A stretch of 64,000 bases of DNA from Selaginella moellendorffii (lineage: Eukaryota; Plantae; Lycopodiophyta): contig NW_003314261.1 in NCBI RefSeq assembly GCF_000143415.4, forward strand, positions 1,440,117 to 1,504,116, written 5' to 3'. A program made the position numbers and the translations under genes. Positions within the stretch are counted from its first letter, which is position 1, and every line of letters starts with the position of its first letter. The notes below the pieces were generated by a model. That model worked only from the letters and a program-made list of their open reading frames with translations. It was not told the DNA's origin and made no database searches. Positions 16,038 through 60,207 of the stretch are shown piece by piece.

Positions 16038-16996
16038 TCAGTATTTCTTTTTCCAAATGAACATCCATAAAACTGTAGTTACCATAACAGAACGAATGTT
16101 ATTAATCATGGTGTCATTGCTTGTTATAAAGCTGTATATTTGCAAATAAATATCTATAGTTGAATTCCTATATAAGAGTTGAATAGGGAATAATACAATA
16201 TGATACACATCAAGTAATAAATAACTTAATTTTAAATATCCAAATATACCATCTAAAAACCAGTCACTATGAGTTCATACTACAATATCATTTATAATTA
16301 AATCACCTGATAATGTAACTGGATTGTAAAGGCCATACTTTTTTATAATATTAATCTCTGTAAAACAAGTACATTAAAAGTAAAAAAATGTTACGTGTAT
16401 TTACCTGTTATATTGTGAGGTAATAAATCCCCTGGTTGCTCATCCAAAGCTAATAATATATCAGCTAAAGTAATATCATTTACATATTTATAAAATATTG
16501 ATTTTGAATCTAAAATAGAGTATTAGAATAGTAATTAAGAATTCTTACTTTTAGTTGGTATGAAATACAATGTGGATAAGTCAATACTCTTATTATTCTC
16601 AGTATTAATATGGATAAATTCATCATAAGCCACAATATCTTTATGATATCAGCTTGCCATCTCTATTTCAAATTGAAACCTAATTACAATAGTTAAAATT
16701 AAGATTAAGTGACCAAGGTCAATAATATTACAGACCTTATCTCCTATAGAAATATCCTTTATTTTTCGTCTTTTACCATTAGAAAGTCTTAAGATAGCAT
16801 CCTCGATATTATAATTATGAATTTATATGATAAAGTAAACCATACCTGGAAAACATTTTTTGTTTTTAACACAATTAGAATCTTTGCAGTGATGACCTGA
16901 AATACAATCTGAATCTTTTGTACATGGATCAAGTTGAGATTTAGTAAAGGACATAAGACATATAATTAAAAACCCATAAATAAAGAAATTACTCAT
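16038..16996 (-). pseudogene. Hog/Hint-domain gene paralog (signal peptide, 4-Cys peptide, Hint) with a premature stop
   Basis: Translates to MSNFFIYGFLIICLMSFTKSQLDPCTKDSDCISGHHCKDSNCVKNKKCFP|...DISIGDK|...GLYNPVTLSGDLIINDIVV*THSDWFLDG...WKKKY*. Same exon layout as 51135-52138. In-frame TGA at ~16275-16277; first intron acceptor looks damaged. Confidence 0.85.
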
Positions 16997-33499: not shown

Positions 33500-34450
33500 G
33501 AAGTAAATGTAGATTATATGATCTTTTGTTTGAATATAAGAAGTCAAGATACCCACAATGCCTCGTTGTGTTATTAGGGATACAGGACGGACCTATAAAA
33601 GAGCTAAGTGAATGAAAAAAACAATAAATAGTATGCTACTGTCATATGGCGTGTTGTCAATGAGAGTTCCTCCAACTCCTCTTCACGAAAAGAATTCACC
33701 TGGAAAATTATGGAACCTTTCTTTGAATGTATTTAACTTTTTAGCTTCTAAACAAATATTTACATTTGATAACTAAGTAAATTTGGAAAATAAAAATGTC
33801 TTAAATGTATAAAGAATTGAAACTATATACCATTAGAATTTCTTTGATTTTCTTTTTTTTTTCCCCATAGATATTGTAAAGTTTATATGGATTTCCAATA
33901 CATTCAAAAGCTTGAAGAGCTATTGGAAAAAATTATATCTTCTTTTTGTTTGATTAGTGAGAAAGGACAACATACATGCAACTTTTATATGATCATCTAC
34001 ATATACTATTATGAAATAATTTTCCATATTATAGACTTAGTCTTCCAAAACCTAATAGTTTTACATACCTCTGAAATTAGGTGGTTTCAAGGGCTTGAGG
34101 CAATTATAAAACTTTATCATCCTTAAAGTTTGAAGAGGAGTTTGGTTTCTTAAGTTTAGCTAATTTTGTTGCATCAACTTTTTTCTTTTTCTTTTTGTTC
34201 TCCTTCAATTTACAAACTTCTTACAAATTCTCAATCTCAATATCTTGAGCTATACACTATAGCACTATAACCTTAAGCTTTTCCTCTTTTGATTTAACCT
34301 CAGCCTTTTCCTTAGCATTTTCAAAATGAGTTTCCTCCTTTTGATTTGCTTGTTTAGAGGTTTTAGCACCATGTACAATTTCTTTTTGCCATCTTATCAA
34401 TTACATATATACATTTATCAATAAGTGAATATGCATATAAGATTCTTATT
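33500..34450 (-). pseudogene. Decayed K/E-rich coiled-coil ORF of unknown origin (possibly TE-encoded)
   Basis: Minus frame reads KTSKQANQKEETHFENAKEKAEVKSKEEKLKVIVL*CIAQDIEIENL*EVCKLKENKKKKK; the TAG/TAA stops fit CAG/CAA deamination. Confidence 0.35.
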
Positions 34451-34599
34451 GGATGATGCAATCTAACTAATCCTACACATGTCACTTTGAATCTATTACA
34501 AAAGTCTTTACGTATGCAACTAGAGTTAAAAATTCCGACAAAAGTTGGATAGAAATCATTGAGATAATTTTGATACCAAATATAGTGCACTTGAATTTA

Positions 34600-36480
34600 A
34601 AGCCAAACTTTTAAGCCTATTGCCCTATAAAATAAAAGTTTGGTATGCACTTAATATCCTTTATGAGCACCAACTCCTTATATTTAGCATATGTATGCAA
34701 AACAATGTTAGACAAATGCAATTTTGGCATACCAATGGCTTAACATGAGGAGGAGGGTACCCACCAACTAGAGCAATATGAAGCTTAGGCTTAGACTTAA
34801 GTTAGACGTAAAACAAAGAGCGACACAGCCTAATAGGAGCTAAATTAATGTCTCAAATGGGCAACTATGTTTTCAACCACTATCTCTATTATACATTTGA
34901 AACTACCCATAACACCCACCTCCCCCTTTTGAGGAATGCATGCTTTGGGCTTTACCCCAATCTCAAAAGTTAATCTTTAGGGCAACCTTGACAATTTACT
35001 AAATATGGAATGGTGTAGGATCAAAACCATGAGATTTAATACACTTTCTACATTCCATAAATATGCCTCTTGAAAAAATTTAGACACTTACCATAGTATA
35101 TAGAACCAAAATAGGACCAACACATGAGCCATGATAACAAGGGTGTGTTATAGACATGGTAAATTATCATGTAGCAATATTAAAGGTCTAAACTCAATAT
35201 CATAAGGGTTCTTAATATTAGTAAGTGCAAACCAATGGTTTGAGTTTCTCAAACTGAGCTAAGTATGCTCAACAAGACATATATAGGATTTTCTACTTTA
35301 TGTTTATTTGATTTAAAAACACATATATTAATCAGTTTCTTAATTAACTTAAGTGAGAACTATAAAGAAAATAATAATGATATCTTACTATTGTGGCAAT
35401 AAAGAGAGAATGTCTGTAAGGATTGGTTGAAAAGTATAATTTGATACTTGAAATCACATTCACAACAAATATGCTCTATAATCTAGTGTTATATATTTGT
35501 CATCTCTTAGAAGTATATTCATTATTATTGGCTATGACAAGAATCAAATTGCAAACTTATATTTATCTGTTATGCCATTTGAGATTAGTATGTATGTATA
35601 CCCAAAATAGATTTATAGACTAGTTTAATTTCTAGACAATGAAAGTTATATCAAATTTAATGTTGGAGCAATCTCCACTTATAACCTCAACATATTATTC
35701 AACTAATAACAATTTGTTAATTTAGAGTAAAATGTTAGTATGCAAGCAAAACTGATGGCAATTCAACTTCCATAGCTTTTTTAAGTTATGCTCCAAATCA
35801 CTATGTAACCTAACTAATATTCCACTCTGACTTTTTGTATGGGCTTGAATAAAGTTTTTCTTATTAAGATGCCCCTTTCTTGTTTCTTCACCCTTTCTAA
35901 AAATAATGATTATGTTATTCAAGATTTTTAACATCAACATATTTAACAATATTGATCTAGAGTTACCACCATCAATAAATTGTAGTAATGATGCTAAGGC
36001 TCTAAATCTACATCTACCTATATATTAGAGTTTTTGATAGTCACCATTAATATTTCATGGGATAATGTAACCCTCAAGGAATATTTCCCACTTGGCTTTC
36101 ATGACAATGTAAAAAATCTCATGCTTTCTCATTTAAATCCAACATCTTCATGACTACCATTGATTTTACTATTCATTGTGACAATTGATTGCAAAAAAAG
36201 CAATTAAAATATCATCATTAAACTTTTGTTTTATAACCCCAATAACCATAATCTGTCTAATAACCCCAATTAGCATATGAACAAGGTGCAATTTTAATGG
36301 AGATTGGAGCTACATCTCAATAATGTCTTTCCAAGGCTGAATAAAAATATTAAATTGAAAACCACCTTTACATATATTATCGTGATGCAAACCACTTTTG
36401 AAAGCAATGTCCTCATCTTCATGCTCACCCTTAGGCTAATACAACAAATGCAACACTTGTGTTTCTAGAAAACAAAAAAT
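34600..36480. mobile_element. LTR-retroelement remnants (G-tract LTR-like copy; gag/protease-like debris)
   Basis: 34870-35470 matches 13121-14630 without the TRIM; minus-strand FIDGGNS protease-like motif near 35955-35980. Confidence 0.55.
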
Positions 36481-43450: not shown

Positions 43451-46400
43451 GCTCTCAACATTCTAAATCAAAGCTTTTAGTTTAAATATGTTATGTTTGT
43501 TGGACTTCTACTTCAACCACTGCCACTCAACAAACTTTTAGCTCCATTTTGGGGCTTAGAGATTTCTATCTTACACTCATTCATATGTCCTTGTTAGATT
43601 GGGCATTATATGCAGGTTCACATATTTGTGAAGGTGTTGTATAAATTCAATATAAGGGACTTCAAGTAAGCCATAAGTCTTTATGTCAATAGGGGAATAG
43701 CAATATATAGTCAGAGTCATCATTTTCAAGTTACAAGCCATCTTGCACCACACATCACTCCAAAAGTGTTTGATCCACCATAAATACATTATTATTGCTA
43801 CATAAAAGAAAGATTTAATTTCACCTAGTTATGAACTTAAGAATCATATATAAATATTACATTATGGCCTTCACACATTAGGCCCTATTGAACTCCCCCA
43901 TTTAATCTTTATATATGTGTTTTGGCTAGCAAAATTATAAAATTGTTTAACAATAGCATTTATAAATAGTTTATCCTCTCTTGTTCATTAACATGAGTAT
44001 GCTTGTGATATAGTGGCTCCCTATGTAAATAAATAACACAAAGTGTGTGGTATTATTTAGAAATTTTAAACACATAGTGGTATTAATGATTCCATCTAAA
44101 TAGATGTGCCAAGACTCTAGCTTGCAATATGTTGCATCAAGACTGAATTTTATGTGGTGGGGGAAATTTATTGTAAATTCACTAAAGCTCCATGGATAAC
44201 TCCACATTGAAAAACACATAAAGAATCAACTTTAATCTCCTTCACAAAATTTGTTTTGGGCAAATATAGATTAATGTAACAGCTAACTCTATATCCAACA
44301 TCTTTTAATTTGCCATTAACATATATAATCTTACATATCATAAAGTTCTCATATTATAAGAGAAACTCTTTAAAAAACACTTGTAACAACACTCTTGAGA
44401 GGATACACCTCTTCCGAGCTTTAATAGTGCAATATGCACCAATCCATTCTAAATAAAGTTAAGATTTCTTATTTTGTAGCCTTCCTTTAATTTAACATTT
44501 ATATAACCAAAATCTTTTTTATTTATTGCAAAACCACTCACTCATAAAGTGCTTTTTATTACCCTCTTTATATAAAATGCCTCAGATGCATGGTAATAGC
44601 TTTTAAAAGGCACTCAAAATCCAGTTCACACTTTATTACAAGCCCTTCACCAATGCTTAAACCGTACTAACATACCAAATAAACTGATATGAAATTTAAT
44701 TTTACATAGTGTTACAAAATTGCATACTTAGCACTAATCTCAACTTTGCCAAATCACCAATGCATGCCTATACCTTGAAAAAAAGTTAGATCCAAAAGAT
44801 TATTTTATTAATCACACATATGTATTTAAAAAATTCAAGAACACATGTGTTTTAAATTGATATATTTTACAGTATATTACAATCTTTTTGCCATGCCATT
44901 AACCCCAGATACACCTTCTCTTTGGAGTTGTACCTTCCCTCAAAATTTACAATTATGTTTTGATTGTCATAGCTAAAGAAGTAAAAAAAGTATATATCAA
45001 GATATATATATAAGATAATTTACTATTTTTCCTTTTACACTTGAGATGTGAATAATGAAAATAAACAAGTAAATCACATCTTTAAAAATTATTTATCCAC
45101 ATAGTCTCTTTTTTTCCTCTTATAGCATAACTCAATAGTAAGTAAAAACAAAATTAAATAAATAATTTATGTTTATACAATTAAAAGACAACATCTATAT
45201 ATATTTAATGCTTTTCAAATAGCTCAATCTAAAGATTTATATTGGTTTTCTGTGGTTTTAATATACATTTAATATTACTATATGATACAACTATAAAATA
45301 ATAATATCTACATTTGCAATATTTATTTATTCACTATCTATTTTTTATTTTTATTTTTGATCCAATATTCTAACATTTGAAGAATAATTTTTATTAGAAG
45401 CAAATCAAGTAAAAAAGCATGGTTGAGCAATTGTAATTACATGATAACTTTCCTAGATCAGCTATATCATCCTCTTATATTTGTTTAAGACTTTTTCTAG
45501 TCTTTACAAGAGATATTGTAAACATTATCATCTTATAAATGTCTTAAAAGAATAGACATTCCTGCAAATGAAAACTCCACGATTAATGTTTTTCTTGCTC
45601 AGGCCAAAAAGTAAAAGCATTAAGTATCATGTATAGATAAAACTTCTATAAAGCATTGAAGTTTTCTTCTATGCAAATCCAATGTAAAGACATATAGTTT
45701 CTTCAGATGTAATTTAAGCATTGTATCCTGCTTTGCAGGACCAAATGTGAAATTTGCAAATATTCAACTTATGCTCACTCACTAGATGAAAAGCCAGGTT
45801 ACTACTCAATCTTGTTTTGCATTAAACATGCCTCCCCTATGACTAAGTTACTGTAGCACTACTTTTGTTAGCTTTCATCTCAAGCAGTAATAAGCTAGAG
45901 CTTGTCTCCAAGCACATGAGAAAGAGAAAGAAAGAAAGAAATCCACTCGCCTTTGTTTGAGGTCAAAGCATACAAAGCCAAGATGAATATAGATTCAATC
46001 ACCAATGCATAAGTTCTCCTTCCCAATCCCTTGGCACAATCAGGCCAAATGTCAATCATGCCAGCACAGAGGTGAAGCTCAAGTGTAGCTATGGGATTGG
46101 AGAGTGCCCTTCTATTCCTCTTATAAACGATCCCTATAGGCCACATCAGCAACCAGAACTAACGAAAACCTTCCTGGACAATAACACAATCATTCAGCAA
46201 GAGCAGCACACTATCAGCCAGGTTCTAGAGTTGGGTGTTATAAATGTCAAGTTTTGGAGCTGTGGTGAACCGTGAGATAGAATCAAATTGACAGTAGTGG
46301 GTGACCTAAACTGCAAACTGAAAAACTTGACCAAATTTTTATTTTTGGTCTTATCTTATATTAGCATGGGTTGGATGATGTCATTGGAAAGACTTTTCGA

Positions 46401-46701: not shown

Positions 46702-48903
46702 TCAGAAGTGACCGTTGGACGGGCCGGCTAAAATCGGTGAGCCCAGCGGAGTGCCAACCCAGTCCGATGCCTTGGGGGATTGAAGCCAAAAATCTCTCAG
46801 TGAAGCTACTGGCCTGTCCTTCCTTACTCCGTGCGTCCGGGGCAGTGGAGCATGAACAGTGATGGGCAGCGTCCACTCTCCCGTCTCCCTGTCTTTGATC
46901 TCGAGGGGATGTGCGTACTTCGACCACTCAACATTCCCTGGAGTGGCCACGAACTCGAAACGAAGAACCCACTGTACCGTGACGTGAGGAGTCGAGAAGG
47001 AAGCCGGGCCATCTAGAGGGATGGAGAAAAGGAAGTGCGTTTGTGAAACATCCGCGACAACTTCGTGATACTCGGATTGAATCTGTGCATCGTTTAGCGT
47101 TAATTGTCTAGCGTGAGAAGGCTACAACAAGAAAGGAAAGTCAAACAGTACCTTGGATATGACTTGCGAGTTCTTCCGGGAAGGATGCAAATGCAAAACG
47201 TTGAGTACTTCGCGAATCTCCAGCACGACTGAGACCTGCATTCTTCTCTTGTTACAGCTGGATACTTCACAATCATTCTCTCTCTCACCTCTAAGCACTT
47301 TCGAGAATCACTTTCTTCTGGAAAGCTGATAACCCCAGCAATCTGCAACGAGTAACGTCAAAAACGAGAGAGAGAAAGTGTGCACTTACAGTGTCTCCAA
47401 AGTAATGAACCGCATCAGGATTCTTGGGTGAAATACGCACAAGAACCTGATTGCCAAGCCTGATGTTGTAGGCTTTCCCCTTCACGTGGCCTGAAAGAAA
47501 CAGCTCAACTTCTAGTTTGACGCCTCCGAAAATAGATTCACCTGGGGAGGAGTCGGTTTTCGAGTCATCCTCTTGCTCACTTGGAAAACCGTCCATCGGG
47601 AACCGATTCCATGGGCTCCAATTCCCAGAGAGCGATGTGTCCAGTGTCCTTTGAGAATGTTCTGCAAAGATAGATCTCAAAACAAAACACGACAACAAAC
47701 TTCCAGTAACTTACTCGGGATTTCGTCTGCAAAAGATGCCATCAATATCTGCTTCTTCAATGCTGGTCGATTTGACTCTTCGCTTCTCGGCTGCGTCCTT
47801 GGAGTCAATGCAGGAGACTGGAGCACCAGCCGATCAAAGTTGTTCTCCAGACTTCCCTTCGGGCTATGGGAAACACTTTCGGATCCTTGACTAGATATAT
47901 CGTCTTCTAAACCTGAGAAAGTACTAGCCGTCCCCGTCTGCCAGATAAAAACGTTGCATTTGCCAAGACTTCAACTAGTGGGCATTGTAGTCAACTCACC
48001 CATTCTGAGTAGGCGCTATTTTCTTTCCACTGCAATTCTGCCTCCACAAGAGACGATGGAACAATGCCTGTGCATTGAGACACTTGTTTTAACGAGATTG
48101 CTTGACAAGTCCAAAAAGAACTGACCGCCATTTTTATGGCTTTCGTTGAGCTCAGCTGAAAGTCCACTGTTGTTAGGCATCGTCCAAACGGTTATGGGAA
48201 TGCGCTTCTCCTACACATGGTTCCAGCGTTCTCATATTAGGAAAATAAAACATTACATACCAGCGGAAGAGCAGCTTGTACCGATGAACTACCATTTTCA
48301 GTGGCAACAAATTTCCACCGAATAGTTGCGGTGAGATGGTAAAAGTATCGTACCGCTGTGCCTCTGAAGGACGGAGGAAGAAGCTTTGGTAGAACCGTGC
48401 GTACAAGATCTAAGCAAATTCACGACTTAAAAGACACTCGACATTTTTAATCGCTTCACCACAGGGAAACCAAAACTTACATGATCTCGTCAATCCGCCC
48501 TCGACGAAGACGCCACTAACCAAAGGTCCGCAAGATTCCAGAAAGATCCGTTCGCCTGTGAAGAGGTTTAAAAAATTTGCAAATTCGCCAGGCACGAACC
48601 TCTCTTTTGCTTCGATCCGGGAGGCTTTGGAGTGACGATCCATTGCGGATCGAGTTTCTCCGTCCCTCTCACCTCCACGGCAAATTCTTCCACCAAAATC
48701 AAGTCGCCGCAATCGGAAGCGCTGGCAGGGTTGGAAATCTCGACCGTAGCGGTGACAGCATCACCTGGCCTGTATACCTTCCGATCCAGGCGCAAATCCA
48801 GCAGCGGCGGCAGCTTGGATCGCGCTGCATTGGCGGCAGCGCCCGAGATCGCCCCCATTTCATCGCGAGAGGACGAGCTCCTGGGAAGAATATTTGCCCA
48901 CAT
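46702..48903 (-). CDS. RGP1: RGP1-like protein (Ric1-Rgp1 Rab6 GEF subunit family)
   Basis: LRLDRKVYRPGDAVTATVEI..GTEKLDPQW; YNIRLGNQVLVRISPKNPDAVHYFGD; VQWVLRFEFVATP..GEWTLPITVHAP; multi-exon. Confidence 0.8.
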
Positions 48904-49284
48904 AAAAGCAACCTAAGTTAGGGCTTGGGAATAGGTTTTAGCCTTTAGGGTGTGATAGTAGTAGTAGCCGCCAGTGCTCTTGGTCTTTCTTTTCCCAAGT
49001 GATGAGAAAAAGTGGATGAAAATCAAGGATGATTGTTTTTCTATTTAAGTCTCTGATGGATATCACAATGGAGAAGATCAAGTGATGAGGCACAGTGCCT
49101 GCAAAACGAAAATGAGACCCACTGTGATTTTTCTACTCTATTTAAGTCTCTGATGATCTCCAAGAAACATTTCAAGTCCCAACTCTGGAATTTAGCATTA
49201 GAAATGTAAAACTTTGATTCTATAAACTAAATCTTAGATTCTTATATGTGCTTGTGTGAACTCTATGCGCTGTAGATTTTAGAT

Positions 49285-51068
49285 ATGAGTATGGGGAGCC
49301 TGGCTGTGCAATTGGGTTCCTTCCATGGCGCACAGATTCTCAACCCATCTACGGTGAAGAAGAAATTGAAGAGGAAATCTTTCTCTTTCTCAAGAGTGAA
49401 TGCTCTATATGCAGATGATGGGGTAAGCCTGTAGACTTCCAGTCTTCAAATAGAAGAGAAAACCCTCCTTTTAGGAGATTGCACCTCAATCTAAAGGAGA
49501 TGGCTTTTCTTTCTATGGTGGTAAGTCTTCTTGTTCTTGTTCTTGTTCTTCTTTTTCAGGGATAAATTTTCTTACAATAATGTAGGAAAATATTCGGATG
49601 AAAGAGATAAAACAGATGACTGGTGGGCACGTGGTGATTTTGTAAGTTAATTCTGTTTTCGTAGTTAAGCTTAAGCTAATTATTAAATATTTTTACATAC
49701 TGCAGATGTATGCATACTCTCCTCAAGGATCATCAAACACAGTGAAAGAACCTTTGTTTGGTATGAAATTGGGTGCACAATCTCAAATATCTTCAAATGA
49801 GTATCGGTGAGGTTAGCATAGATGGTTTTAACAGTCATTAATTAGATATTTCTCAGATGGTTTTACGTTGAAGAAGGGACAAATAATAATCACACAATAC
49901 TGCTTTTACATGGTTTATGTTCGCAGGTGATGGTGTATTACTTAGGACGAGCTAACATATGTAGATTTTCAGGCTTATTCTTTTAGACATGTTATTTCTA
50001 TACTTGCCAAAGATTATCACGTTATAGCAGTTGATTGGTTGGGTAAGTTATATAGTTATGTCTTCTGTTCTATCATCATGGATAGGCTTTGGATTCTCGG
50101 ACAAACCATTATATGGTAATGGATTTAATTATACAACTCAAGGTAATGAACATAGACTGTTTTTAATTTTGTAGACTGTTTTTGTTTTTTCTTAAAACCT
50201 GCAGAGTATACAAATGCGCTTAGCTGTTTGGTGGATCGATTAAAATCAAACCAAATTTCTATAGTTGCTCAGGTAACTAAACACTAAATCTTTTTAAAAG
50301 GATTTTTTAAAGCTTTTTAAGACAGGGACATTTTACACCTCCAGTCGTAGAATATATTAGCGCAAATCCTTTCAAAATAGTTAAACTTATCATGATTAAT
50401 CCACCAGTAAGTAATCAAGAAACACAAAACATTATTTCATTTATTATTTCTTATACAGGTATCTAAAGAACACAGTGCTTTACCATCAAATCTCTTAGAA
50501 TTTACAAATTTATTCTTAGGTGATATATTTTCCCAGGTAAACTAGAATTACAAGAGCTTTCTAGCTATAAAGATTTGCTTATGTCAGGATCCTTTTAAAG
50601 CAAGTGATGGTGCTATGTCAAGAATAAGTTATTATGCTATAACAGAGGAGGATAAAATGGTTTATAGAAAGCCATATTTATCATCAGGATCAGCTGGATT
50701 TGCACTAAAGTCTGTGATTAAAAGTTTTAAAAAAGAGTTAAAGGTAATGCATTTCTCTAATGAATAAATATATTCTTGCTAAACATTTGGCTATAGGATT
50801 CAATTTTATCAGTTCGATCTTTATTAACGTCTAAAAACTGGGAAACACCTATATATTTTATTGGTGGTTTGAACGACAGATGGCTAAATTATAAATCACT
50901 CAAAACCTTTTGTGAGGAGTTCCAATTTAAACTAATCACTTTAGACAAGGTATAGCAAATATTTCAACATTAGTTTTAATATATTATTTTCAGGGTGGAC
51001 ATCTTCTACAAGAAGACATTGAAATTGACCTAGCAAATATAATAACAGGTTTATTAAAAAGTCCATAA
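49285..51068 (+). CDS. Plastid-targeted alpha/beta hydrolase (haloalkane-dehalogenase-like; resembles At4g12830)
   Basis: Transit-peptide-like N-terminus; DGFSFYGG, RWFYVEEG..LLHG, AVDWLGFGFSDKP, LGDIFSQDP, YRKPYLSSGSAGFAL, GGHLLQED; about 12 short introns. Confidence 0.85.
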
Positions 51069-51134
51069 AATAACAAAAACCAACCAATCTATATATAGTC
51101 ACCAGTTATATATCAGTTTTCATAGACTTAAAAA

Positions 51135-52138
51135 ATGAATGGTTTTCTTTTCTCTTTATCACTAGTTCTTAATGTTTTACCATTAATTAAAACTCAAGTT
51201 GATCCATGTACAAAAGATGAAGATTGCATAAAAGGTTATGAATGCAGGAACTTTAATTGTTATGTACGTCCAAGTTGTTTTCCAGGTAATTTTACTCCTT
51301 TTCTTGTTTTAAGAATACATTGTTTTTTTGTAATAGCTGATGCTATTATAAAACTTTATAATGGTAAAACAAAGCAAGTGAAGGATATTTCTATTGGTGA
51401 TAAGGTTTGTAGTTTTATAGAGCTTTAGTTCTTGCCTTTGATGGTGATGTTAATATGGGTAGGTTGCAATTCAAAATAAAAAAGGTATTATAGATTATTC
51501 TGATATATATGCTTTTGGACACCAAGATCTTAAAGCCTATAAAGAGTTTATTCATATTGATATTAGTAATAGAAAAAGCATTGAGTTATCTTCATTTCAT
51601 TATATACCTGTTATATGTAAGTATGTTTGAAATAGTTATTATGGCCACTAATAGTTTTATCTTTAGATTCAAAATCAACTATTTACAAATATGCTAATGA
51701 TGTTATATTAACTGATGTTTTATTAGCATTAGATGAAAAATCAGGAAAGATTATACCTTACAATATAACAGGTAAGAAAACTTATATTTTTTTCTTGTAC
51801 TTATTTAAGTATTTTTAGATATTTATGTGGTAAAAAAATATGGCCTTTATAATCCATTCATATTATCTGGAGATTTAATTGTAAATGATATTGTAGTTTC
51901 AACACATAGTGATTGGTTTTTAGATGGGTTATTTAGATATTTTAAACTAAGTCATTTACTACCTCACATATATCATTTTATTTTGTTTCCTATTCAAGTT
52001 CTATATGAAAAGTTAACTTTTGAGATTTATTTAAAGATATACAGCTTTGTAACAAATAATAGTATTATATTCAATTATATTAGTGGCATTGTGAGAGCTA
52101 CAGTTTTCTGGACGTTTTTTTCAAAACCAAAATACTAA
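51135..52138 (+). CDS. Secreted Hedgehog-type Hint (Hog) protein: signal peptide, 4-Cys peptide, Hint domain, SRR-like hydrophobic tail
   Basis: Exons ~51135-51285, 51337-51404, 51463-51616, 51667-51771, 51819-52138 give ..RPS|CFPADAIIKLYNGKTKQVKDISIGDKV..YSDIYAFGHQD..IELSSFHYIPV..YANDVILTDVL..GLYNPFILSGDLIVNDIVVSTHSDW..HIYHFILFPIQVLY. Confidence 0.88.
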
Positions 52139-52196
52139 AAAATGTAGAAAAACAATAGTAAATAAAGTGGATTTGAATTTCAATGTATTGCTTTAA

Positions 52197-52290
52197 ACTC
52201 TCTCTCTCTCTCATTTTCTCTCTCTCTCTCTCATTTTCTCTCTCTCTCTCTCTTTCACACATACACACACACACAGAGAAAGAGAGAGAT
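52197..52290. repeat. (CT)n/(CA)n/(GA)n microsatellite
   Basis: Directly visible; absent from the duplicated block at ~58127. Confidence 0.95.
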
Positions 52291-52455
52291 TGTTAGTGTT
52301 TTCTAACTTAAAGTAAAACTATTAACAATATATTCTATTGACGCTTTGTCAACAGTTGTGTGCTATGCATAGTAGGATAGTTGCTAGCACTTGAGTATAA
52401 TAATAAAATTTGCTGTAATTTTTAGAGTTTTTACGATCAAACAATCAAAATAATA

Positions 52456-54356
52456 TTAATACTCCGGTGCTCTTGGACTGAAGTACTGCTGGTATACACC
52501 ACTCTCCACGATTTCCAGCATCCTGGTCGCATTTTTCTTGATACACCTTGGCAGCTTGAATTGAGAAACACTTCCACCCCTGGATGCGGCATCATCAGCG
52601 ATTCGATTGAAAGTCCCTGGTGTCACAAGCCTCAGCTCCAGAGCTCCAATGGATCTCTCCATCCTCCCCCTGTGATACACCACGCTCAGTGATTCTTCCA
52701 TCTTGTAGCAGCACTCTCCTGCCTTTTCCGGTTCCAAGTGAAGCTCGCTGGACAGCTCCCAGTAAATCACGTAGTGCGGAGGATTGGAGGAGAGGTCGGC
52801 ATAGCTGGTGTAGTCCGTCAATCTTATTGCCTCCCCCTCCTTGCTCGTGACGCCATTTCGCAATGCCGCAAACGCGTTCATGACTGCGGTCTGGAGCTCC
52901 TTCTCGTCCGTTTTGTCCGAGTCGATGCTAAGTAGAACGTTCCTCCGGCAGACGAAGCTGAAGAGCGGAGCTTTGTTGTGGAAGCCCTCGACTCTAAGAA
53001 CGTCACCCATGCGATATCTGTACAATCCTGATGGAAAGAGCCAGAAAAGATAAAGATACAAGCCAAGACAATGAACTGGAAACTATACCAGCGTTTGTCG
53101 TGATCACAAGCTCGTACTCGTGGCCTTGTTCCACATCAACGAGTTCCACGGGCTCTTCACGAGAAGCTTTCTCCTCCGATCGAGCCACCGGCAGAAACTC
53201 GTAGTAGGACGTCTCGGGCAGAAACATGTAGGAGATCTGGGACGGATCGCAAAGCGGCTTGAGATTCACTCCAAAGAAAGACTCCGAGGACGCGTAGATC
53301 ATGGATGCTATTGGCAGGCCGTCGGTGAGATAGTCGACTTCTCCAACATACTGCTCCATAGCACCGGTGACGACTGTGTCGATAGCTTTGGCACTGGGCC
53401 ACAGCTTCCGGACGATTCCTTTCAAGCTTCCACTCAAGCACGCCTCGTCGATCACGTTCGCAAGCTCTGGATCCGGCCTTAAGATCTTCTCCACGGCTTC
53501 TCTGCAAGCCGGATCCACAACTCTCTCGGACAAAGTTCCCGTTCGTATGTCCCTGGAAAGCTCCTGCCACCAGGCTTCGAGGCACCTTATCGACCTCACG
53601 AGCGCCGACGCAAAGAAGCAGCCCAGCTTCGTCACGTCTCGGGCGTGGATCAAACCACACAGCAAGTGGCAGTAGGAGGCTTGCACGCTGTCCGTGCAAA
53701 GTATCACCTCCAGGGGGCTTGTATAATCGTTGCTTGGATCGAAAAGCCAGTTGCGGAACTCTGGACTGTTGTAGTATCCCGTCAGTGCTGGATAAGCTGG
53801 AAGTCCTCCAGGAGTCTTGCGGCCACTTCTCACGTATAAGAAGTACAAAGCTTTGCCGGTCCTCAGTCCAGGCAAGTCCCTACAGATTCGAAGGAACAAA
53901 CAATCATAAGCTTTGGAGGAAAATGACGACGAATACCTGTTGAGCAGAGCGGTGGCAAGATCAAAGAAGTAATCCGACACAGCATAGTGTCCCTCCGCTT
54001 TCGGGAACAGCTTGTGAGCCCCGCCGGAGGTCCCAGAGCTGCCAAAAGATCTTTGCAAAATCGACAAACTAGAGATAAACTTACCTCGTGAACATATCCG
54101 TGATAGGATTCGCAGAGAGCAAAGTAGAGGCCTCGCCGTCGGCAATTCGATTGATCTCATCCTTGATGTCTTCGTACTCAATGACCGGCGCTCTCTGCCG
54201 AAACACCTCCTTGGTTGCTGCTCGCAATCCATGCCTATTGAAGTAGTCTGTGGCGGCATTCTTCTCCAGGATCTCGGCCAGAACTTTATCCTGAGCCTCA
54301 CCGGGACTCCAGCTCGAGCTCTCGAGCTTCTCAAGCAGGAGCTGCTCGTTCTCCAT
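52456..54356 (-). CDS. GH3: GH3 acyl-acid amido synthetase, copy 1
   Basis: TSSGTSGG, YASSESFFG, GLYRYRMGD, QFKLPRC motifs; 4 exons. Confidence 0.93.
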
Positions 54357-55699: not shown

Positions 55700-57820
55700 T
55701 TATTGAAATGGAAGAACCTGGTTAATCGTATTGCTTGGTGGGCTTTGAAATTTTAGATATATAATTTTGATGTTGTTCATTGCCCAGGGAGTTTTATGAC
55801 TGATGCTGATACTCTTTCTTGAACTCCTCTTCCTTCTTCACTCTCTTCTCATATTTCTGATGAGCTTGTTATTCCAGCATCTGTGAATTTTTTAAACAAG
55901 GATTCTGTACCGTCGACGGTTGTTATACTTGACATTTAATGTCCACAATGTGCAGAATAAGATCTACCTTCTCTTTGATGAGGTTCGCGAGGCTCCAAAT
56001 ATTGAGCCAAATATCGTTCTTAGACGTTGTTACAAGGTAATCATGCTATTATTACATCATTATTGAAGCGGAAGAACTTGGTTGATCGTATTGCTCGGTG
56101 GGCTTTGAAGATTCAGATATATAATTTTGATGTTGTTCATTGCCCGGGGAGTTCTATAGCTGATGCTAATTCCCTTTCTTGAGCTCTTCTTCCTTCTTCG
56201 CTTTCTTTTTATGTTTTTAACGAGCTTGTTGTTCTAGCATCTACAGATTTTCTACACAAGAATTCTGTGCTATCAACAGTTGCTATTCTTGATGTTCAGT
56301 GTCCATAAGATACAAAGCAAGATCTACCTTCTTTTGATGAAGTTCGTGAGGCTCAAAAGATTAAGTTGTGAATTCGAAAGCTTCAAGAAGGGTTTGAGAA
56401 TCCTACATCACTTGCTGACGACTTACCATTCCGGCATTTAAGTTCTTAATATCGCCTTAAAAACAACTTTTTTTATTTTATGGGGATGGATTTTGATGAT
56501 CATTTATGGCTGGTGGTGCCTTCAATGTTTATTCCACGATTTTTCCATGCATACTATGATTCTCCTATTTTAGGTGGGCATATGGGACATCATCATATGA
56601 CCAAGAAGCTGCACAGATCTTTCTATTAGCTAAAGATGCGATGTGATGTTATCCGGTATATGTATAAATGCGTTTAGTATTAAGCACGTAATACTCCCCT
56701 TTATACTGCAGAAGGATGATTGGAGTCAATTGCAGTTTCCCATTCGTTTGAGTTGGTGGCATTTGATCTTATAGGACCTTTTCCATGATCGACTTTTGGT
56801 AGTGAGTATGTTATTATTGCTTCTAACTACTTGACTTGTTAGGTGAAAATTGGTGCTCTTGCTAGTGCCTCTGGAACTACTGTTAGATACTTCCTCCTTA
56901 ATGAAGTGGTGTTCTAGCATTCTTCTCCGGAGCGGATTCTTTCGGTAATGGTCCCATATTTATAGTTAAGGCATTTCATGTTTTGACATCTTGGTTGGGA
57001 ATACACCACACTTTCATGAGTGTTTATTATCCATAGTCAGACGGTTTAGTGGAATGGCTTGTTCAAACATTCAAAGGGATGATCGTTAAGTATATGAACT
57101 TTCAGCATTCGGATTGGGATGGTTATTTACTGTTTTTTCAATATACATATGTCACAAGGGTGCAAAATTATATTGGTGTTTCACTATATAAACTCCTATA
57201 TGGTCATGATCCAATATTACCAACGGAGTTGGGTTTACCTTTGCAATTGCCACGAGCTACCGATGCTAGGTCGTGGGATCAGTTTTTGATGAGCATTCTT
57301 CCACTTGTCCAAATAGAGTCTACTAAATACCTAAGCCACATACAAGTGGGACAATAACGACACTACAATTCACATCATTGTTCACCTACAGAGTACAAAG
57401 TGGATGACTTGGTGTTAGTCTATTTTCCCCATCTTATGATACATAGTTTATCTAAAAGGCTCCTTGCTTAGTGAAAAGGGCCATATCAAGTATTGTGGCA
57501 AGTTAGACCACACGTTTATGAGATATGGCATAATGTCAAGTAAGTTAATCCTCCAAAAATTGTGCATGTGCAACAGTTGAAATATTTTGTACAAAGGGAT
57601 TAGGAATAACTGATACCATCTACAAATCCACCAATGCCTCCTGTTGATGGTAGGGATGATATGAGATTCAAGTGTATGGTTACAATGCCGTATATTATAA
57701 TTAGCATAGTGGGATTTTAGTAGCTGTTGGATTGGTTTTAATTTGGACCACTCACTCCTATATATAAACTAGGGTTTTTGAGCTAATAGATATGCATAAT
57801 TTTATTATTCCCTAGACATA
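55700..57820 (+). mobile_element. Ty3/gypsy pol remnant (RNase H end, duplicated; integrase) plus LTR-like 3' end
   Basis: DRIARWALKIQIYNFDVVHCPG; integrase HHCC-like GGHMG..FY*LKMRCDV; FELVAFDLIGPF; YYP*SDGLVE; many stops. Confidence 0.85.
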
Positions 57821-57824
57821 ATAC

Positions 57825-58050
57825 TTGGTTTTTAGATGGGTTATTTAAATATTTTAAACTAAGTCATTTACTACCTGATATATATCATTTTATTTTGTTT
57901 CCTATTCAAATTCTATATAAAAAGTTAACTTATGAGATTTATTTAAAGATACACAGCTTTATAACAAATAAAGGTACTATACTGAATTATATTAGTGGCA
58001 TTGTGACAGCTACAATTTTATAGATGCTTATTCAAAATCAATATACTAAA
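57825..58050 (+). pseudogene. 3' fragment of the Hog/Hint gene carried by the segmental duplication
   Basis: Matches 51913-52138 (WFLDGLFKYFKLSHLLPDIYHFILFPIQ); TGG changed to TAG near 58021. Confidence 0.85.
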
Positions 58051-58304
58051 TAAAGGTTAAAAATGTAGAAAAAATAGCAAATAAAGTGGGATTTTAAGCA
58101 TTTGAATTTCAGTGTATTACTCTGAACTCTCTTGTTAGTGTTTTCTAAGTTAAGGTGATGAAACTATTGATCATATATTCTACTGACGCTTGACAACAGT
58201 TGTGTGCTATGCAGTTTATAGTACGATAGTTGCTAGCACTTGAGTATAATAATAAAATTTGCTGTAATTTTTAGAGTTTTTACGATCAAACAATCAAAAT
58301 AATA

Positions 58305-60207
58305 TTAATACTCCGGTGCTCTTGGACTGAAGTACTGCTGGTATACACCACTCTCCACGATTTCCAGCATCCTGGTCGCATTTTTCTTGATACACCTTGG
58401 CAGCTTGAATTGAGAAACACTTCCACCCCTGGATGCGGCATCATCAGCGATTCGATTGAAAGTCCCTGGTGTCACAAGCCTCATCTCCAGAGCTCCAATG
58501 GATCTCTCCATCCTCCCCCTGTGATACACCACGCTCAGTGATTCTTCCATCTTGTAGCAGCACTCTCCTGCCTTTTCCGGTTCCAAGTGAAGCGCGCTGG
58601 ACAGCTCCCAGTAAATCACGTAGTGCGGAGGATTGGAGGAGAGGTCGGCATAGCTGGTGTAGTCCGTCAATCTTATTGCCTCCCCCTCCTTGCTCGTGAC
58701 GCCATTTCGCAATGCCGCAAACGCGTTCATGACTGCGGTCTGGAGCTCCTTCTCGTCCGTTTTGTCCGAGTCGATGCTAAGTAGAACGTTCCTCCGGCAG
58801 ACGAAGCTGAAGAGCGGAGCTTTGTTGTGGAAGCCCTCGACTCTAAGAACGTCACCCATGCGATATCTGTACAATCCTGATGGAAAGAGCCAGAAAAGAT
58901 AAAGATACAAGCCAAGACAATGAACTGGAAACTATACCAGCGTTTGTCGTGATCACAAGCTCGTACTCGTGGCCTTGTTCCACATCAACGAGTTCCACGG
59001 GCTCTTCACGAGAAACTTTCTCCTCCGATCGAGCCACCGGCAGAAACTCGTAGTAGGAGGTCTCGGGCAGAAACATGTAGGAGATCTGGGACGGCTCGCA
59101 AAGCGGCTTGAGATTCACTCCAAAGAAAGACTCCGAGGACGCGTAGATCATCGACGCTATTGGCAGGCCGTCGGTGAGATAGTCGACTTCTCCAACATAC
59201 TGCTCCATAGCACCGGTGACGACTGTGTCGATAGCTTTGGCACTGGGCCACAGCTTCCGGACGATTCCTTTCAAGCTTCCACTCGAGCACGCCTCGTCGA
59301 TCACGTTCGCAAGCTCTGGATCCGGCCTTAAGATCTTCTCCACGGCTTCTCTGCAAGCCGGATCCACAACTCTCTCGGACAAAGTTCCCGTTCGTATGTC
59401 CCTGGAAAGCTCCTGCCACCAGGCTTCGAGGCACCTTATCGACCTCACGAGCGCCGACGCAAAGAAGCAGCCCAGCTTCGTCACGTCTCGGGCGTGGATC
59501 AAACCACACAGCAAGTGGCAGTAGGAGGCTTGCACGCTGTCCGTGCAAAGTATCACCTCCATGGGGCTTGTGTAGTCGTTGCTTGGATCGAAAGGCCGGT
59601 TGCGGAACTCTAGACTGTTGTAGTATCCCGTCAGTGCTGGATAAGCTGGAAGCCCTCCAGGAGTCTTGCGGCCACTTCTCACGTATAAGAAGTACAAAGC
59701 CTTTCCGGTTCTCAGTCCAGGCAAGTCCCTACAGATTCGAAGGAACAAACAATCATAAACTTTGGAGGAAAATGACGACGAACACCTGTTGAGAAGAGCG
59801 GTTGCAAGATCAAAGAAGTATTTCGACACAGCATAGTGTCCCTCCACTTTCGGGAACAGCTTGTGAGCCCCGCCGGAGGTCCCAGAGCTACCACAAAGTC
59901 TTTGCGAAATCGACAAAAACTAGAGATAAGCTTACCTCGTGAACATATCCGCGATAGGATTCGCACAGAGCAAAGTAGAGGCCTCGCCGTCGGCAATTCG
60001 ATTGATCTCATCCTTGATGTCTTCGTACTCAATGACCGGCGCTCTCTGCCGAAACACCTCCTTGGTTGCTGCTCGCAATCCATGCCTGTTGAAGTAGTCT
60101 GTGGCGGCATTCTTCTCCAGGATCTCGGCCAGAACTTTATCCTGAGCCTCACCGGGACTCCAGCTCGAGCTCTCGAGCTTCTCAAGCAGGAGCTGCTCGT
60201 TCTCCAT
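58305..60207 (-). CDS. GH3: GH3 acyl-acid amido synthetase, copy 2
   Basis: Same motifs and exons as copy 1, with few substitutions. Confidence 0.94.

What the first reader, a model, noticed from the sequence alone, without database searches (positions are those of the whole stretch)
51135..52138. Hedgehog-like self-processing precursor of a tiny Cys-rich secreted peptide
Seen in sequence: a 5-exon gene encoding a signal peptide, a ~27-aa peptide (QVDPCTKDEDCIKGYECRNFNCYVRPS, four Cys) and then CFP, the Hint N-terminal nucleophile. It also has a block-B-like ELSSFH (S in place of T), FGHQD, the Hh-type C-terminal block GLYNPFILSGDLIVNDIVVSTHS (compare GxYAPLTxxGTIVVNxVxAS) and a His/Pro hydrophobic segment resembling the sterol-recognition region. 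Established: Hedgehog Hint/SRR domains autocleave at this Cys and attach cholesterol to the upstream domain, and Hog-domain genes have been noted in non-flowering plants, but their function is unknown. Inference: this could release a sterol-tailed, disulfide-bonded mini-peptide, i.e. a lipid-anchored plant signal or defence peptide made by intein-like chemistry.
Basis: partly seen in the sequence, partly recalled or inferred. Interest (0 to 1): 0.9.

Follow-up and report, generated by a model that had tools for sequence, protein, structure and literature searches.

The report
Silent extra spikemoss Hog gene copy
This is a real, intact but unannotated and apparently unexpressed extra copy of a spikemoss (Selaginella) gene family, known since 2008, that fuses a tiny four-cysteine secreted peptide to a Hedgehog-type self-cleaving domain; what such plant proteins attach to their peptide is still untested.

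Summary
Window 51135-52138 (+) is a clean five-exon, 265-codon gene: signal peptide, 27-residue four-Cys peptide, then CFP and a complete Hint plus conserved C-terminal region.

- Homology: three exons hit Pfam Hint colinearly. A family HMM scores the spliced protein 219.8 bits (best shuffle 3.4). blastp gives 3e-51 to an annotated Selaginella moellendorffii Hint protein with the same four-Cys cargo.
- Active site: Cys1, Ser-x-x-His and 19 of 20 near-invariant family residues are kept. His replaces the Hedgehog Asp46 base in all 54 aligned relatives. Hedgehog Cys143 is absent (Thr).
- Not new: Hog genes of Selaginella and moss were published in 2008 and are annotated. This scan has reported sister AT-rich copies on other DNA of this genome.
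- No expression seen: depth is zero in three RNA-seq runs and one contig set, while both neighbouring genes are expressed and spliced.
- Decaying surroundings: the gene is 25% GC with CpG o/e 0.13. One sister copy in the window has two stop codons and a lost catalytic His. Another is a truncated fragment.

The copy is either narrowly expressed or recently silenced. Self-cleavage is plausible; sterol tailing is unsupported. Interest is modest.

The parts
51135..51285 (+). Exon 1. Codons 1-20 are a hydrophobic signal-peptide-like N-terminus (51135-51194). Codons 21-47 are the 27-aa four-Cys cargo QVDPC...YVRPS (51195-51275; Cys25, 31, 37, 42). Cys48 of CFP, the predicted cleavage nucleophile, is at 51276-51278.
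   Evidence: Translation and hydropathy. The cargo aligns with the four-Cys cargo of P0013. CFP is invariant in 53-55 of 55 relatives. No signal-peptide predictor was available.
51286..51336 (+). Intron 1 (51 nt, GT..AG, phase 1), directly after CFP+G
   Evidence: The position is shared with the P0151 gene.
51337..51404 (+). Exon 2: ADAIIKLYNGKTKQVKDISIGDK (Hint block A)
   Evidence: Pfam Hint 12.3 bits, model positions 17-38.
51405..51462 (+). Intron 2 (58 nt, GT..AG, phase 0)
   Evidence: The position is shared with the P0151 gene.
51463..51616 (+). Exon 3. His93 (51520-51522) lies at the Hedgehog Asp46 general-base position. Ser116 (51589-51591) and His119 (51598-51600) form the T/S-x-x-H block B.
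   Evidence: Pfam Hint 17.2 bits, model positions 43-87. The alignment of P0013 to 6TYY/6TD6/1AT0 places the plant His on D46 and TxxH on T69/H72.
51617..51666 (+). Intron 3 (50 nt, GT..AG, phase 1). It is present in copies A and B but absent from the P0151 gene.
   Evidence: If retained it gives an in-frame TGA.
51667..51771 (+). Exon 4: middle of the Hint domain
51772..51818 (+). Intron 4 (47 nt, GT..AG, phase 1)
   Evidence: The position is shared with the P0151 gene.
51819..52138 (+). Exon 5. It holds the Hint C-terminal block GLYNPFILSGDLIVNDIVVS, with Thr188 (51902-51904) at the Hedgehog Cys143 position. Then comes the family-conserved post-Hint region HSDWFLD...LP..Y...L.P (codons 189-243) and a hydrophobic C-terminal tail (codons ~241-259). 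Stop TAA is at 52136-52138.
   Evidence: Pfam Hint 17.9 bits, model positions 132-162. There are 267 representative clusters with E<=1e-3, matching query residues up to ~80 of 105. Invariant columns are and hydropathy.
51090..51098 (+). TATATATAG, a possible TATA element about 40 nt upstream of the ATG. The upstream gene's stop codon is only 67 nt before the ATG.
   Evidence: Read from the sequence only; not tested. The upstream transcript's coverage fades out by the 50970-51166 bin.
16041..16996 (-). Copy B: a decayed paralogue with the same layout (cargo QLDPCTKDSDCISGHHCKDSNCVKNKK + CFP). It has two in-frame TGA stops. The catalytic His (H72 position) is Tyr and a family-invariant Pro is Leu.
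   Evidence: tblastn and reading of the sequence.
57817..58017 (+). Copy C: a fragment holding only codons 189-255 of the last exon (78% aa identity to A). It lies in a tandem duplicate of the Hog-3'-end + GH3 segment. Homology to A stops abruptly at 57816.

Best explanation
This is one more member of the plant/algal 'Hog' family (Hint module plus a conserved C-terminal adduct-recognition-type region) in a Selaginella genome. It belongs to a very AT-rich, five-exon sub-group whose cargo is a 27-residue four-Cys peptide.

Inferred mechanism, if the protein is made:
1. The signal peptide takes it into the ER and the four cargo cysteines pair.
2. Cys48 attacks the Ser47 carbonyl (N-to-S acyl shift), helped by Ser116/His119, the T/SxxH block.
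3. The thioester is resolved by a nucleophile positioned by His93, which sits where Hedgehog has Asp46.
4. The mini-peptide is released, either as a free acid or esterified to a lipid or sterol. The Hog part, with its hydrophobic C-terminal tail, stays behind.

Shown here: the gene structure, family membership, the conserved catalytic residues, a Hint fold for the closest annotated paralogue, and historical purifying selection. Not shown: expression, cleavage, or any adduct.

At this locus the gene is intact but unannotated, and silent in all RNA data examined. It sits among decayed sister copies. It is therefore either expressed only in an unsampled stage or condition, or a recently silenced duplicate.
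For: - Gene model.
- Pfam Hint hits colinearly in three exons.
- The family HMM gives 219.8 bits over residues 46-243, against at most 3.4 bits for 200 shuffles.
- blastp gives 2.8e-51 to P0013 = EFJ13332.1 of S. moellendorffii. The 10 relatives tested reach Pfam Hint 85-108 bits.
- 19 of 20 near-invariant family residues are retained and the twentieth is V to I.
- P0013 aligns to Hedgehog structures 7E2I, 6TYY, 6TD6 and 1AT0 with the plant His on D46 and TxxH on T69/H72.
- The AlphaFold model of P0013 (pLDDT above 90 across the Hint module and most of the post-Hint region) matches 1AT0 best: TM 0.87, rmsd 1.8 A over 145 columns. It aligns 187 residues, up to residue 256, with an Ihh-type predicted model.
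- The D46H mutant of Hedgehog still processes (PMC12054796).
- dN/dS between A and B is 0.26-0.34 in the Hint and last exons and 0.89 in the cargo.
- Three of four intron positions are shared with the gene of the GC-normal paralogue.
- Silence: zero depth over 51167-52348, while the upstream gene has 2-25x and the GH3 gene 30-130x, both with spliced reads. No indexed RNA run holds the stretch.
- Not in the protein collection: the best representative is about 50% identical on exon 5, and nothing turned up in the word search.
Against: - No transcript is seen, so the splice sites and the protein itself are unconfirmed.
- CpG o/e is 0.13 and GC 25%, against 0.89 and 52% in the neighbouring GH3 gene. 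This fits long-term silencing with methyl-C decay (the link to methylation is inference).
- On the branch leading to copy A since the A/C duplication, all 6 polarised changes in 67 codons are non-synonymous. Given the family's historical dN/dS this has a probability of about 0.02-0.05 by my own binomial estimate from the site counts. The sample is small and the outgroup distant.
- Both sister copies in the window are dead.
- Hedgehog Cys143, reported as required in animal Hh, is Thr.
- The spliced protein itself could not be submitted to Pfam or AlphaFold, because it has no reference.
Confidence: 0.8

Rival explanations
1. Young pseudogene. The copy was silenced after the local duplication and is still open only because too little time has passed. 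It makes no product.
For: - Zero RNA depth while both neighbours are expressed, and no RNA run is on record as holding the stretch.
- The A-branch changes are all non-synonymous, 6 of 6.
- A-C dN/dS is about 2, with 2 synonymous and 16 non-synonymous differences.
- Only 5.8% of single-base changes in this CDS create a stop, so a few percent of neutral divergence can leave the frame open.
- Sister copies B and C are decayed.
- There are only 67 nt between the upstream gene's stop and the ATG.
- CpG o/e is 0.13.
Against: - All four splice-site pairs, the start codon, the catalytic residues and 19 of 20 near-invariant residues are intact, whereas copy B has lost several.
- AT-richness predates the A/B split (both are about 25% GC). 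Yet A-B dN/dS is 0.26-0.34, so AT-rich copies were under selection for a long time.
- Earlier notes of this scan report several other intact AT-rich copies elsewhere in the genome (unchecked by me).
Confidence: 0.4
2. It is a working, narrowly expressed gene (for example gametophyte, reproductive or stress-induced) whose Hog domain esterifies a phytosterol to the C-terminus of the four-Cys peptide, giving a lipid-anchored signal or defence peptide.
For: - The precursor is intact with a complete catalytic set for thioester formation.
- His lies at the general-base position, and the D46H Hedgehog mutant is active.
- The post-Hint helical region is conserved. In predicted models it aligns partly with the region that follows the Hint module in animal Hh.
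- The cargo evolves fast while its Cys are fixed (dN/dS 0.89), as in many secreted Cys-rich peptide families (general knowledge).
- In Cyanidiophyceae red algae most Hog genes are expressed in one life stage only (PMC13353863).
Against: - No transcript is seen.
- No adduct has been shown for any non-animal Hog. As of 2026 their function is called unknown (PMC13353863).
- The Pfam match stops before the animal sterol-recognition part.
- Cys143 is absent.
- The cargo has no confident fold in the model of P0013, with pLDDT 40-56. Its matches to peptide families are all below threshold.
Confidence: 0.15
3. The Hog domain acts only as a self-removing pro-domain or ER-exit device. The thioester is hydrolysed, or passed to a non-sterol nucleophile, and the peptide leaves without a lipid.
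For: - The family lacks Cys143 and the animal SRR sequence.
- Burglin named the corresponding region of non-Hh proteins the 'adduct recognition region' because the adduct is unknown (PMC2362128).
- Cargoes across the family are extremely varied: none, Pro-rich, hevein-type chitin-binding, and large Cys-rich domains.
Against: The post-Hint region (S-x-H-S-x-W-F-L-D ... LP..Y...L.P) is nearly invariant in 55 relatives. That argues for a function beyond plain hydrolysis, which a bare Hint module can do (established for the Drosophila Hh-C17 fragment, 1AT0; my knowledge).
Confidence: 0.25
4. It is foreign or mobile DNA, such as a contaminant, horizontal transfer or transposon passenger, as suggested by the 25% GC island.
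For: - GC is 25% against 41% for the window.
- There are three copies within 64 kb, and earlier notes suggest many copies in the genome.
Against: - It is flanked on one contig by expressed Selaginella-type genes: an alpha/beta-hydrolase-like gene, and a GH3 gene 91% identical to SELMODRAFT_119116.
- GC already falls gradually through the upstream host gene.
- Its spliceosomal introns have host-typical size, and three positions are shared with the gene of a GC-normal Selaginella paralogue.
- No flank similarity between copies A and B was detected.
Confidence: 0.03

Closest known systems
Selaginella moellendorffii EFJ13332.1 (SELMODRAFT_446381, UniProt D8SQW9) / XP_002985754.2, annotated 'Hint domain-containing protein' / 'indian hedgehog B protein' (P0013, P0151)
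   Same: - The layout is the same: signal peptide, short four-Cys cargo, CFP, Hint, conserved HS.WFLD...LP..Y region and a hydrophobic C-terminus.
- It is 36% identical over residues 1-239, E 2.8e-51.
- Three intron positions are shared.
   Different: - Its gene is 43.5% GC and is annotated.
- Its cargo is 36 residues with spacing C-x6-C-x5-C-x11-C, against 27 residues with C-x5-C-x5-C-x4-C here.
- It has no intron 3.
- It has Gly at -1 and Thr in TxxH, where this copy has Ser in both places.
Burglin 2008 plant Hog proteins: pSm Hog (ESTs DN839649/DN837769), pPp Hog, pSl Hog (PMC2362128)
   Same: The Hog domain is the same, with FGH, T/SxxH, GLYNP...VN..AS.HSEWFLD and the motif-J Cys replaced.
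   Different: pSm Hog has essentially no cargo (signal peptide, then CFP). pPp Hog has a cargo of about 230 residues. The four-Cys mini-peptide cargo is not described in that paper.
Animal Hedgehog C-terminal autoprocessing domain (Drosophila Hh-C, PDB 1AT0; D46H mutant 6TYY)
   Same: - The Hint fold is shared: the model of the paralogue gives TM 0.87, rmsd 1.8 A.
- Cys1, the residue at position 46, position 69 and His72 fall at the same numbering counted from the nucleophile (48, 93, 116, 119 here).
- His at position 46 equals the engineered, still active D46H.
   Different: - There is no HhN signalling domain.
- Cys143 is Thr.
- The sterol-recognition part of the Pfam model is not matched.
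- The adduct is unknown.
Nematode 'short-hog' proteins (Xiphinema Shog1/Shog2, Trichinella Xhog3; PMC2362128)
   Same: They have a signal peptide plus a very short predicted released peptide (15, 25 and 34 residues) in front of a Hog domain.
   Different: They are animal proteins. I know of no relation between the cargoes. [quoted passage not shown] I did not compare sequences.
Cyanidiophyceae (red alga) Hog gene families (PMC13353863)
   Same: They are multi-copy non-Hh Hog genes of unknown function, mostly expressed in one life stage.
   Different: They have different cargoes (kelch or none), a subtelomeric location and a different lineage. I did not compare sequences.
Inteins and bacterial intein-like (BIL) domains
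   Same: They share the Hint fold and the N-terminal Cys with TxxH chemistry (Foldseek hits from rank 3 onwards).
   Different: There is no C-extein and no terminal Asn plus downstream nucleophile. The Hint module ends in VVSTHS and runs on into the helical region, so no splicing is expected.

Membership tests
Hog proteins (Hint + SRR/ARR; Burglin 2008) / Pfam Hint PF01079 | Significant match to the Hint profile | tested here: met
   - Pfam on exon pieces gives 12.3, 17.2 and 17.9 bits at colinear model positions. Each is below the 29.7 cut-off alone; the rough sum is 47.
- The full spliced protein scores 219.8 bits against an HMM of 55 relatives, versus at most 3.4 for shuffles.
- The 10 relatives tested score 85-108 bits on Pfam Hint.
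- Full-length Pfam on the spliced protein was not run, because it has no reference.
Hog proteins (Hint + SRR/ARR; Burglin 2008) / Pfam Hint PF01079 | N-terminal nucleophile Cys in motif A (C-F-P) directly after the cargo | tested here: met
   Cys48-Phe-Pro. The columns are C 55/55, F 54/55 and P 53/55.
Hog proteins (Hint + SRR/ARR; Burglin 2008) / Pfam Hint PF01079 | Block B T-x-x-H | tested here: met
   Ser116-Ser-Phe-His119. His is 55/55 and the first position is T 30 / S 25 in the family. It aligns to T69/H72 of Drosophila Hh through P0013.
Hog proteins (Hint + SRR/ARR; Burglin 2008) / Pfam Hint PF01079 | Signal peptide, so that processing occurs in the secretory pathway | tested here: inconclusive
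   The N-terminus is hydrophobic (Kyte-Doolittle 1.5 over residues 1-19) and aligns with the N-termini of relatives. No signal-peptide predictor was available.
Hog proteins (Hint + SRR/ARR; Burglin 2008) / Pfam Hint PF01079 | Conserved region after the Hint module (motifs J/K; SRR or ARR) | tested here: met
   The family-type region S-x-H-S-x-W-F-L-D...LP..Y...L.P is present and every near-invariant residue is kept. It is helical with pLDDT above 90 in the model of P0013.
Bona fide Hedgehog (cholesterol-transferring HhN-HhC) | HhN signalling domain (Pfam HH_signal) | tested here: not met
   The cargo is 27 residues. Its only hits are sub-threshold Dickkopf_N and Nodulin_late.
Bona fide Hedgehog (cholesterol-transferring HhN-HhC) | Asp46 general base | tested here: not met
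   His93 occupies the position, and it is His in 54/54 aligned relatives. It may be functionally equivalent, since the D46H Hedgehog mutant still processes (PMC12054796; PDB 6TYY).
Bona fide Hedgehog (cholesterol-transferring HhN-HhC) | Cys143 (branched intermediate; C143A/D abolish processing) | tested here: not met
   It is Thr188 here. The family column is A/S/V/C/T. The requirement is stated in PMC12054796.
Bona fide Hedgehog (cholesterol-transferring HhN-HhC) | Sterol-recognition region and sterol transfer | tested here: inconclusive
   The Pfam match ends at model position 162 of 213 in this gene and in all relatives tested. Model-to-model alignment with an Ihh-type protein extends to residue 256 of P0013 (187 residues). 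The chemistry cannot be tested with these tools.
Inteins | C-terminal Asn plus downstream Cys/Ser/Thr and a C-extein to ligate | tested here: not met
   The Hint module ends in VVSTHS and continues into the helical region to the stop codon. There is no Asn-nucleophile junction.
Named Cys-rich peptide families (Dickkopf_N, Nodulin_late/NCR) | Profile match above the curated threshold | tested here: not met
   Scores are 18.2 bits against a cut-off of 25 and 17.2 against 30.4. The best Atlas feature scores are 0.84 or lower, which is a lead only.

The most novel reading that the evidence does not exclude
The AT-rich, five-exon, four-Cys Hog copies of Selaginella are not junk. They are a methylated, stage-restricted gene set (for example gametophyte, sporangium or infection). 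Its Hog domains, using His instead of Asp as base and no Cys143, would attach a phytosterol or other lipid to rapidly diversifying disulfide-bonded mini-peptides. That would be a plant counterpart of lipid-tailed Hedgehog ligands.
Probability: 0.12. Interest if true: 0.75.

Novelty: new member of a known kind. Interest (0 to 1): 0.3.

Why it matters
What non-animal Hog domains do with their thioester is a genuine open question. A 2026 paper still calls their function unknown (PMC13353863). A 27-residue cargo would make a convenient mass-spectrometry substrate for answering it. The near-universal His at the Hedgehog Asp46 position is a natural counterpart of the engineered D46H enzyme.

This locus adds little by itself, for three reasons:
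- The family and this very layout are already published or annotated.
- The scan has met sister copies on other DNA of the same genome.
- This copy shows no expression.

Its practical value is as an annotation fix (one unannotated intact gene, one pseudogene, one fragment) and as one data point on AT-rich, CpG-depleted, silent-looking gene copies in this genome.

Tried and rejected
- phmmer of exon 3 and exon 5 pieces against PDB sequences gave nothing meaningful: kinase/Sec62 noise at E about 1, and no hit. The pieces are too short, so I used the full-length paralogue P0013 instead.
- The word-indexed protein search with exon 5 gave no hit in the 58-184 aa range. This is uninformative about longer relatives.
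- The look-up of encoding contigs for P0013 found nothing on record. P0151 worked.
- Species identification through the 778-aa PPR ORF was a poor choice. The family is huge and the best identity was 31-39%. The GH3 neighbour gave 91% to S. moellendorffii. That fixes the genus but not the exact species or assembly.
- The ESM Atlas search on the signal peptide plus cargo scored 0.84 or lower. It returned generic toxin and Cys-rich peptide clusters with no assignment.
- The ORF upstream of fragment C looked integrase-like by eye but has no Pfam hit. I make no claim about what truncated copy C.
- The search of earlier findings by sequence was blank.
- Not done: Pfam hmmscan, AlphaFold and an exact-sequence look-up on the spliced 265-aa protein itself. 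I used exon pieces by reference, in-sandbox HMM and BLAST on the spliced sequence, and the closest annotated paralogue as a structural proxy.
Full report
**1. What is in the sequence**

Reading 50700-52600 and splicing at canonical sites gives a clean gene on the + strand. Exons are 51135-51285, 51337-51404, 51463-51616, 51667-51771 and 51819-52138. The four GT..AG introns are 51, 58, 50 and 47 nt. The CDS is 798 nt and the protein 265 aa.

The protein runs as follows:
- a hydrophobic N-terminus, residues 1-20;
- the 27-residue peptide QVDPCTKDEDCIKGYECRNFNCYVRPS, with Cys at 25, 31, 37 and 42;
- Cys48-Phe-Pro and then a Hint-like sequence;
- a 75-residue partly hydrophobic tail.

The only cysteines are the four in the cargo plus Cys48. 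RNA-confirmed introns in both neighbouring genes are 43-64 nt, so the predicted introns have the normal size for this genome.

**2. Is it more than chance**

Yes.
- The CDS is 25.5% GC, where stop codons are frequent, yet 265 codons are open.
- Exon 2, exon 3 and exon 5, scanned separately by reference, each hit Pfam Hint PF01079 and nothing else. The model positions are colinear: 17-38, 43-87 and 132-162.
- The exon-5 piece alone finds 267 representative clusters at E<=1e-3 in 1.84 billion proteins.
- The spliced protein, built in the sandbox from the window file, matches these representatives from about residue 41-48 to 222-240 with E down to 2e-51.
- An HMM built from 55 of them scores it 219.8 bits over residues 46-243. 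The best of 200 shuffles scores 3.4 bits.

**3. Family and organism**

The best full-length match, P0013, is EFJ13332.1 (SELMODRAFT_446381). Its cluster includes XP_002985754.2, named 'indian hedgehog B protein', of Selaginella moellendorffii.

Other close representatives are:
- S. moellendorffii 'warthog protein 4/6';
- Ceratodon purpureus (moss);
- Diphasiastrum (lycophyte);
- Adiantum (fern);
- Gonium (green alga).

All ten relatives tested carry Pfam Hint at 85-108 bits.

The neighbouring GH3 gene is 91% identical to an S. moellendorffii GH3 protein, with the next best at 53% or lower. The window is therefore Selaginella. Earlier notes of this scan say S. moellendorffii. I did not prove the exact species or assembly, and a PPR ORF in the window has no close protein on record.

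The gene of P0151 (GL377634.1) is 43.5% GC. From its sequence I read introns at the same positions as introns 1, 2 and 4 here. Intron 3 is extra in this sub-group.

**4. Catalytic anatomy**

P0013 aligns to human Shh (7E2I, 1e-10), Drosophila Hh (6TD6), its C-terminal fragment (1AT0) and the D46H mutant (6TYY). Through that alignment and the family alignment:
- Cys48 corresponds to Cys1.
- His93 falls on Asp46. Counting from the nucleophile it is position 46 exactly.
- Ser116 and His119 fall on Thr69 and His72.
- Thr188 falls on Cys143.

In 55 relatives the columns read as follows:

| Position | Residues in the family |
|---|---|
| Cys1 | C 55/55 |
| 46 | H 54/54 |
| 69 | T 30, S 25 |
| 72 | H 55/55 |
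| 143 | A, S, V, C or T |
| -1 | G 18, S 15 |

According to PMC12054796 the Hedgehog active site is C1, D46, T69, H72 and C143. D46H still processes, whereas C143A and C143D do not. The plant family therefore has everything for the thioester step and a plausible base. It lacks the Hedgehog-specific Cys143, as Burglin already noted for moss and red-algal Hogs.

After the Hint module the family has a nearly invariant S-x-H-S-x-W-F-L-D ... LP..Y...L.P stretch, all kept here. The Pfam Hint model is matched only to position 162 of 213. The animal sterol-recognition sequence is therefore not recognisably present.

**5. Structure (proxy)**

The spliced protein has no reference, so I folded the closest annotated paralogue P0013 with a 60-row alignment that includes this gene's exon pieces.
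- Mean pLDDT is 82.5. It is above 90 across most of residues 61-240, the Hint module and most of the post-Hint helices. It is 40-56 for the signal peptide and cargo.
- Foldseek ranks 1AT0 and 6TYY first (TM 0.86-0.87, rmsd 1.8-2.0 A). Inteins and BIL domains follow.
- Against ESM Atlas models an Ihh-type entry aligns 187 residues, reaching residue 256. That includes some of the helical region. This is a model-to-model comparison and only modest evidence.

**6. Cargo**

The four-Cys peptide aligns with the four-Cys cargo of P0013, sharing D.C..G[FY].CR and the last Cys. The layout therefore already exists in an annotated gene.

Burglin's published pSm Hog has no cargo beyond the signal peptide, and pPp Hog has a large one. 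The mini-peptide type was thus not described in that paper. The paper did describe nematode 'short hogs' with predicted peptides of 15-34 residues.

The cargo has no significant match to any peptide family. Dickkopf_N and Nodulin_late score below their cut-offs and Atlas scores are 0.84 or lower.

Across the family, cargoes range from none through Pro-rich and hevein chitin-binding domains to large Cys-rich domains.

**7. Is this copy alive**

Evidence for a live gene:
- The frame, the start codon, all splice sites, the catalytic residues and 19 of 20 near-invariant residues are intact.
- dN/dS between copy A and copy B is 0.34 for the Hint exons and 0.26 for the last exon. It is 0.89 in the cargo, with all Cys conserved.
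- Both A and B are about 25% GC. The sub-group was therefore already AT-rich while under purifying selection.

Evidence against:
- Three raw RNA-seq runs of the same species label (about 12% of each read) and one contig set give zero depth over 51167-52348.
- In the same runs the upstream alpha/beta-hydrolase-like gene has 2-25x with 11 spliced junctions. The downstream GH3 gene has 30-130x.
- No indexed RNA run is on record as holding the stretch; listed runs hold at most 0.04 of its sampled words.
- CpG o/e is 0.13, against 0.89 in GH3.
- The upstream gene's stop is 67 nt before the ATG.
- The gene is not in the protein collections, so it appears unannotated.

The local family is decaying:
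- Copy B (16041-16996, minus strand) has two in-frame TGA codons. The His72-equivalent is Tyr and an invariant Pro is lost.
- Copy C (57817-58017) is only codons 189-255. It sits in a tandem duplicate of the segment that also carries GH3, where 52290-53500 matches 58132-59349 at 97.9%.
- Polarising the A/C differences with B as outgroup gives 6 changes on the A branch, all non-synonymous. This is compatible with neutrality. It is unlikely (about 0.02-0.05 by my estimate) under the family's historical constraint. The sample is only 67 codons of the least conserved region.
- Only 5.8% of point changes create stops, so a recently released gene could still be open.

I cannot decide between a narrowly expressed gene and a recently silenced one.

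**8. How it most likely works, if made**

- ER entry through the signal peptide (inferred).
- Two disulfides form in the cargo (inferred).
- An N-to-S acyl shift occurs at Ser47-Cys48, assisted by Ser116/His119. This is inferred from conservation and from the established Hint mechanism.
- The thioester is resolved with the help of His93.
- The 27-mer is released, while the Hog part keeps its hydrophobic tail.

The nature of the attacking nucleophile (water, sterol or other lipid) is unknown for every non-animal Hog. A 2026 paper still calls their function unknown. It also notes that most red-algal Hog genes are expressed in one life stage only (PMC13353863), which keeps the stage-restricted reading open.

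**9. Novelty and verdict**

This is a new, unannotated member of a known kind. The family has been published since 2008 (PMC2362128). The same layout is annotated in S. moellendorffii. This scan has already reported sister AT-rich five-exon four-Cys copies on other pieces of this genome: s1-337333, s1-418885, s1-363736 and s1-374775, each also called intact, unannotated and silent (I could not see their sequences).

The other note on this window (s1-422270) calls copy B a hidden second gene. I find it to be a pseudogene.

Interest is modest at 0.3. The open question of the plant Hog adduct is real, but this silent copy is not the best handle on it.

Noticed in passing
It has in-frame TGA codons in exon 3 and in the last exon. 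The catalytic His is replaced by Tyr and a family-invariant Pro is lost. The same four-Cys cargo pattern is kept.
   Followed up: yes
window 57817-58017 (+): This is a third Hog remnant holding only codons 189-255, with 78% aa identity to copy A. Homology stops abruptly at 57816. The ORF just upstream (57049-57357) looked integrase-like by eye but has no Pfam hit.
   Followed up: partly
window 52290-53500 and 58132-59349: These two segments form a tandem segmental duplication at 97.9% identity carrying two GH3 (auxin-amido-synthetase-type) genes. RNA reads show a second variant at about half frequency at many GH3 positions, as expected if both copies or haplotypes are expressed. The adjoining Hog 3' end is much more diverged (83% over 320 nt) than the GH3 part.
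   Followed up: partly
window ~48900-51068 (+): This is an expressed alpha/beta-hydrolase-like gene with 11 RNA-confirmed short introns. I recognised the hydrolase motifs by eye and ran no Pfam scan. Its GC falls steadily from about 0.38 to 0.27 towards its 3' end, so the AT-rich island is not confined to the silent Hog gene.
   Followed up: partly
family alignment A1 (55 Hog proteins from plants, algae and metagenomes): His occupies the Hedgehog Asp46 general-base position in 54 of 54 aligned non-animal Hogs, a natural counterpart of the engineered D46H enzyme (PDB 6TYY). The stretch S-x-H-S-x-W-F-L-D right after the Hint module is nearly invariant.
   Followed up: partly
window 30767-33103 (+): This 778-aa single-exon PPR ORF has no protein above about 40% identity in the 5.8-billion-protein set, including S. 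moellendorffii. Either it is unannotated too, or the window is not from the reference assembly.
   Followed up: no
window 52195-52300: A (CT)n/(CA)n microsatellite block lies directly downstream of the Hog stop codon. The reads tool skipped it as a repeat.
   Followed up: no
window 8001-10000, 34001-36000, 44001-46000: These are further AT-rich islands (GC 0.27-0.30) like those that hold Hog copies A and B. tblastn with the Hog protein found nothing significant there. Their content was not examined.
   Followed up: no
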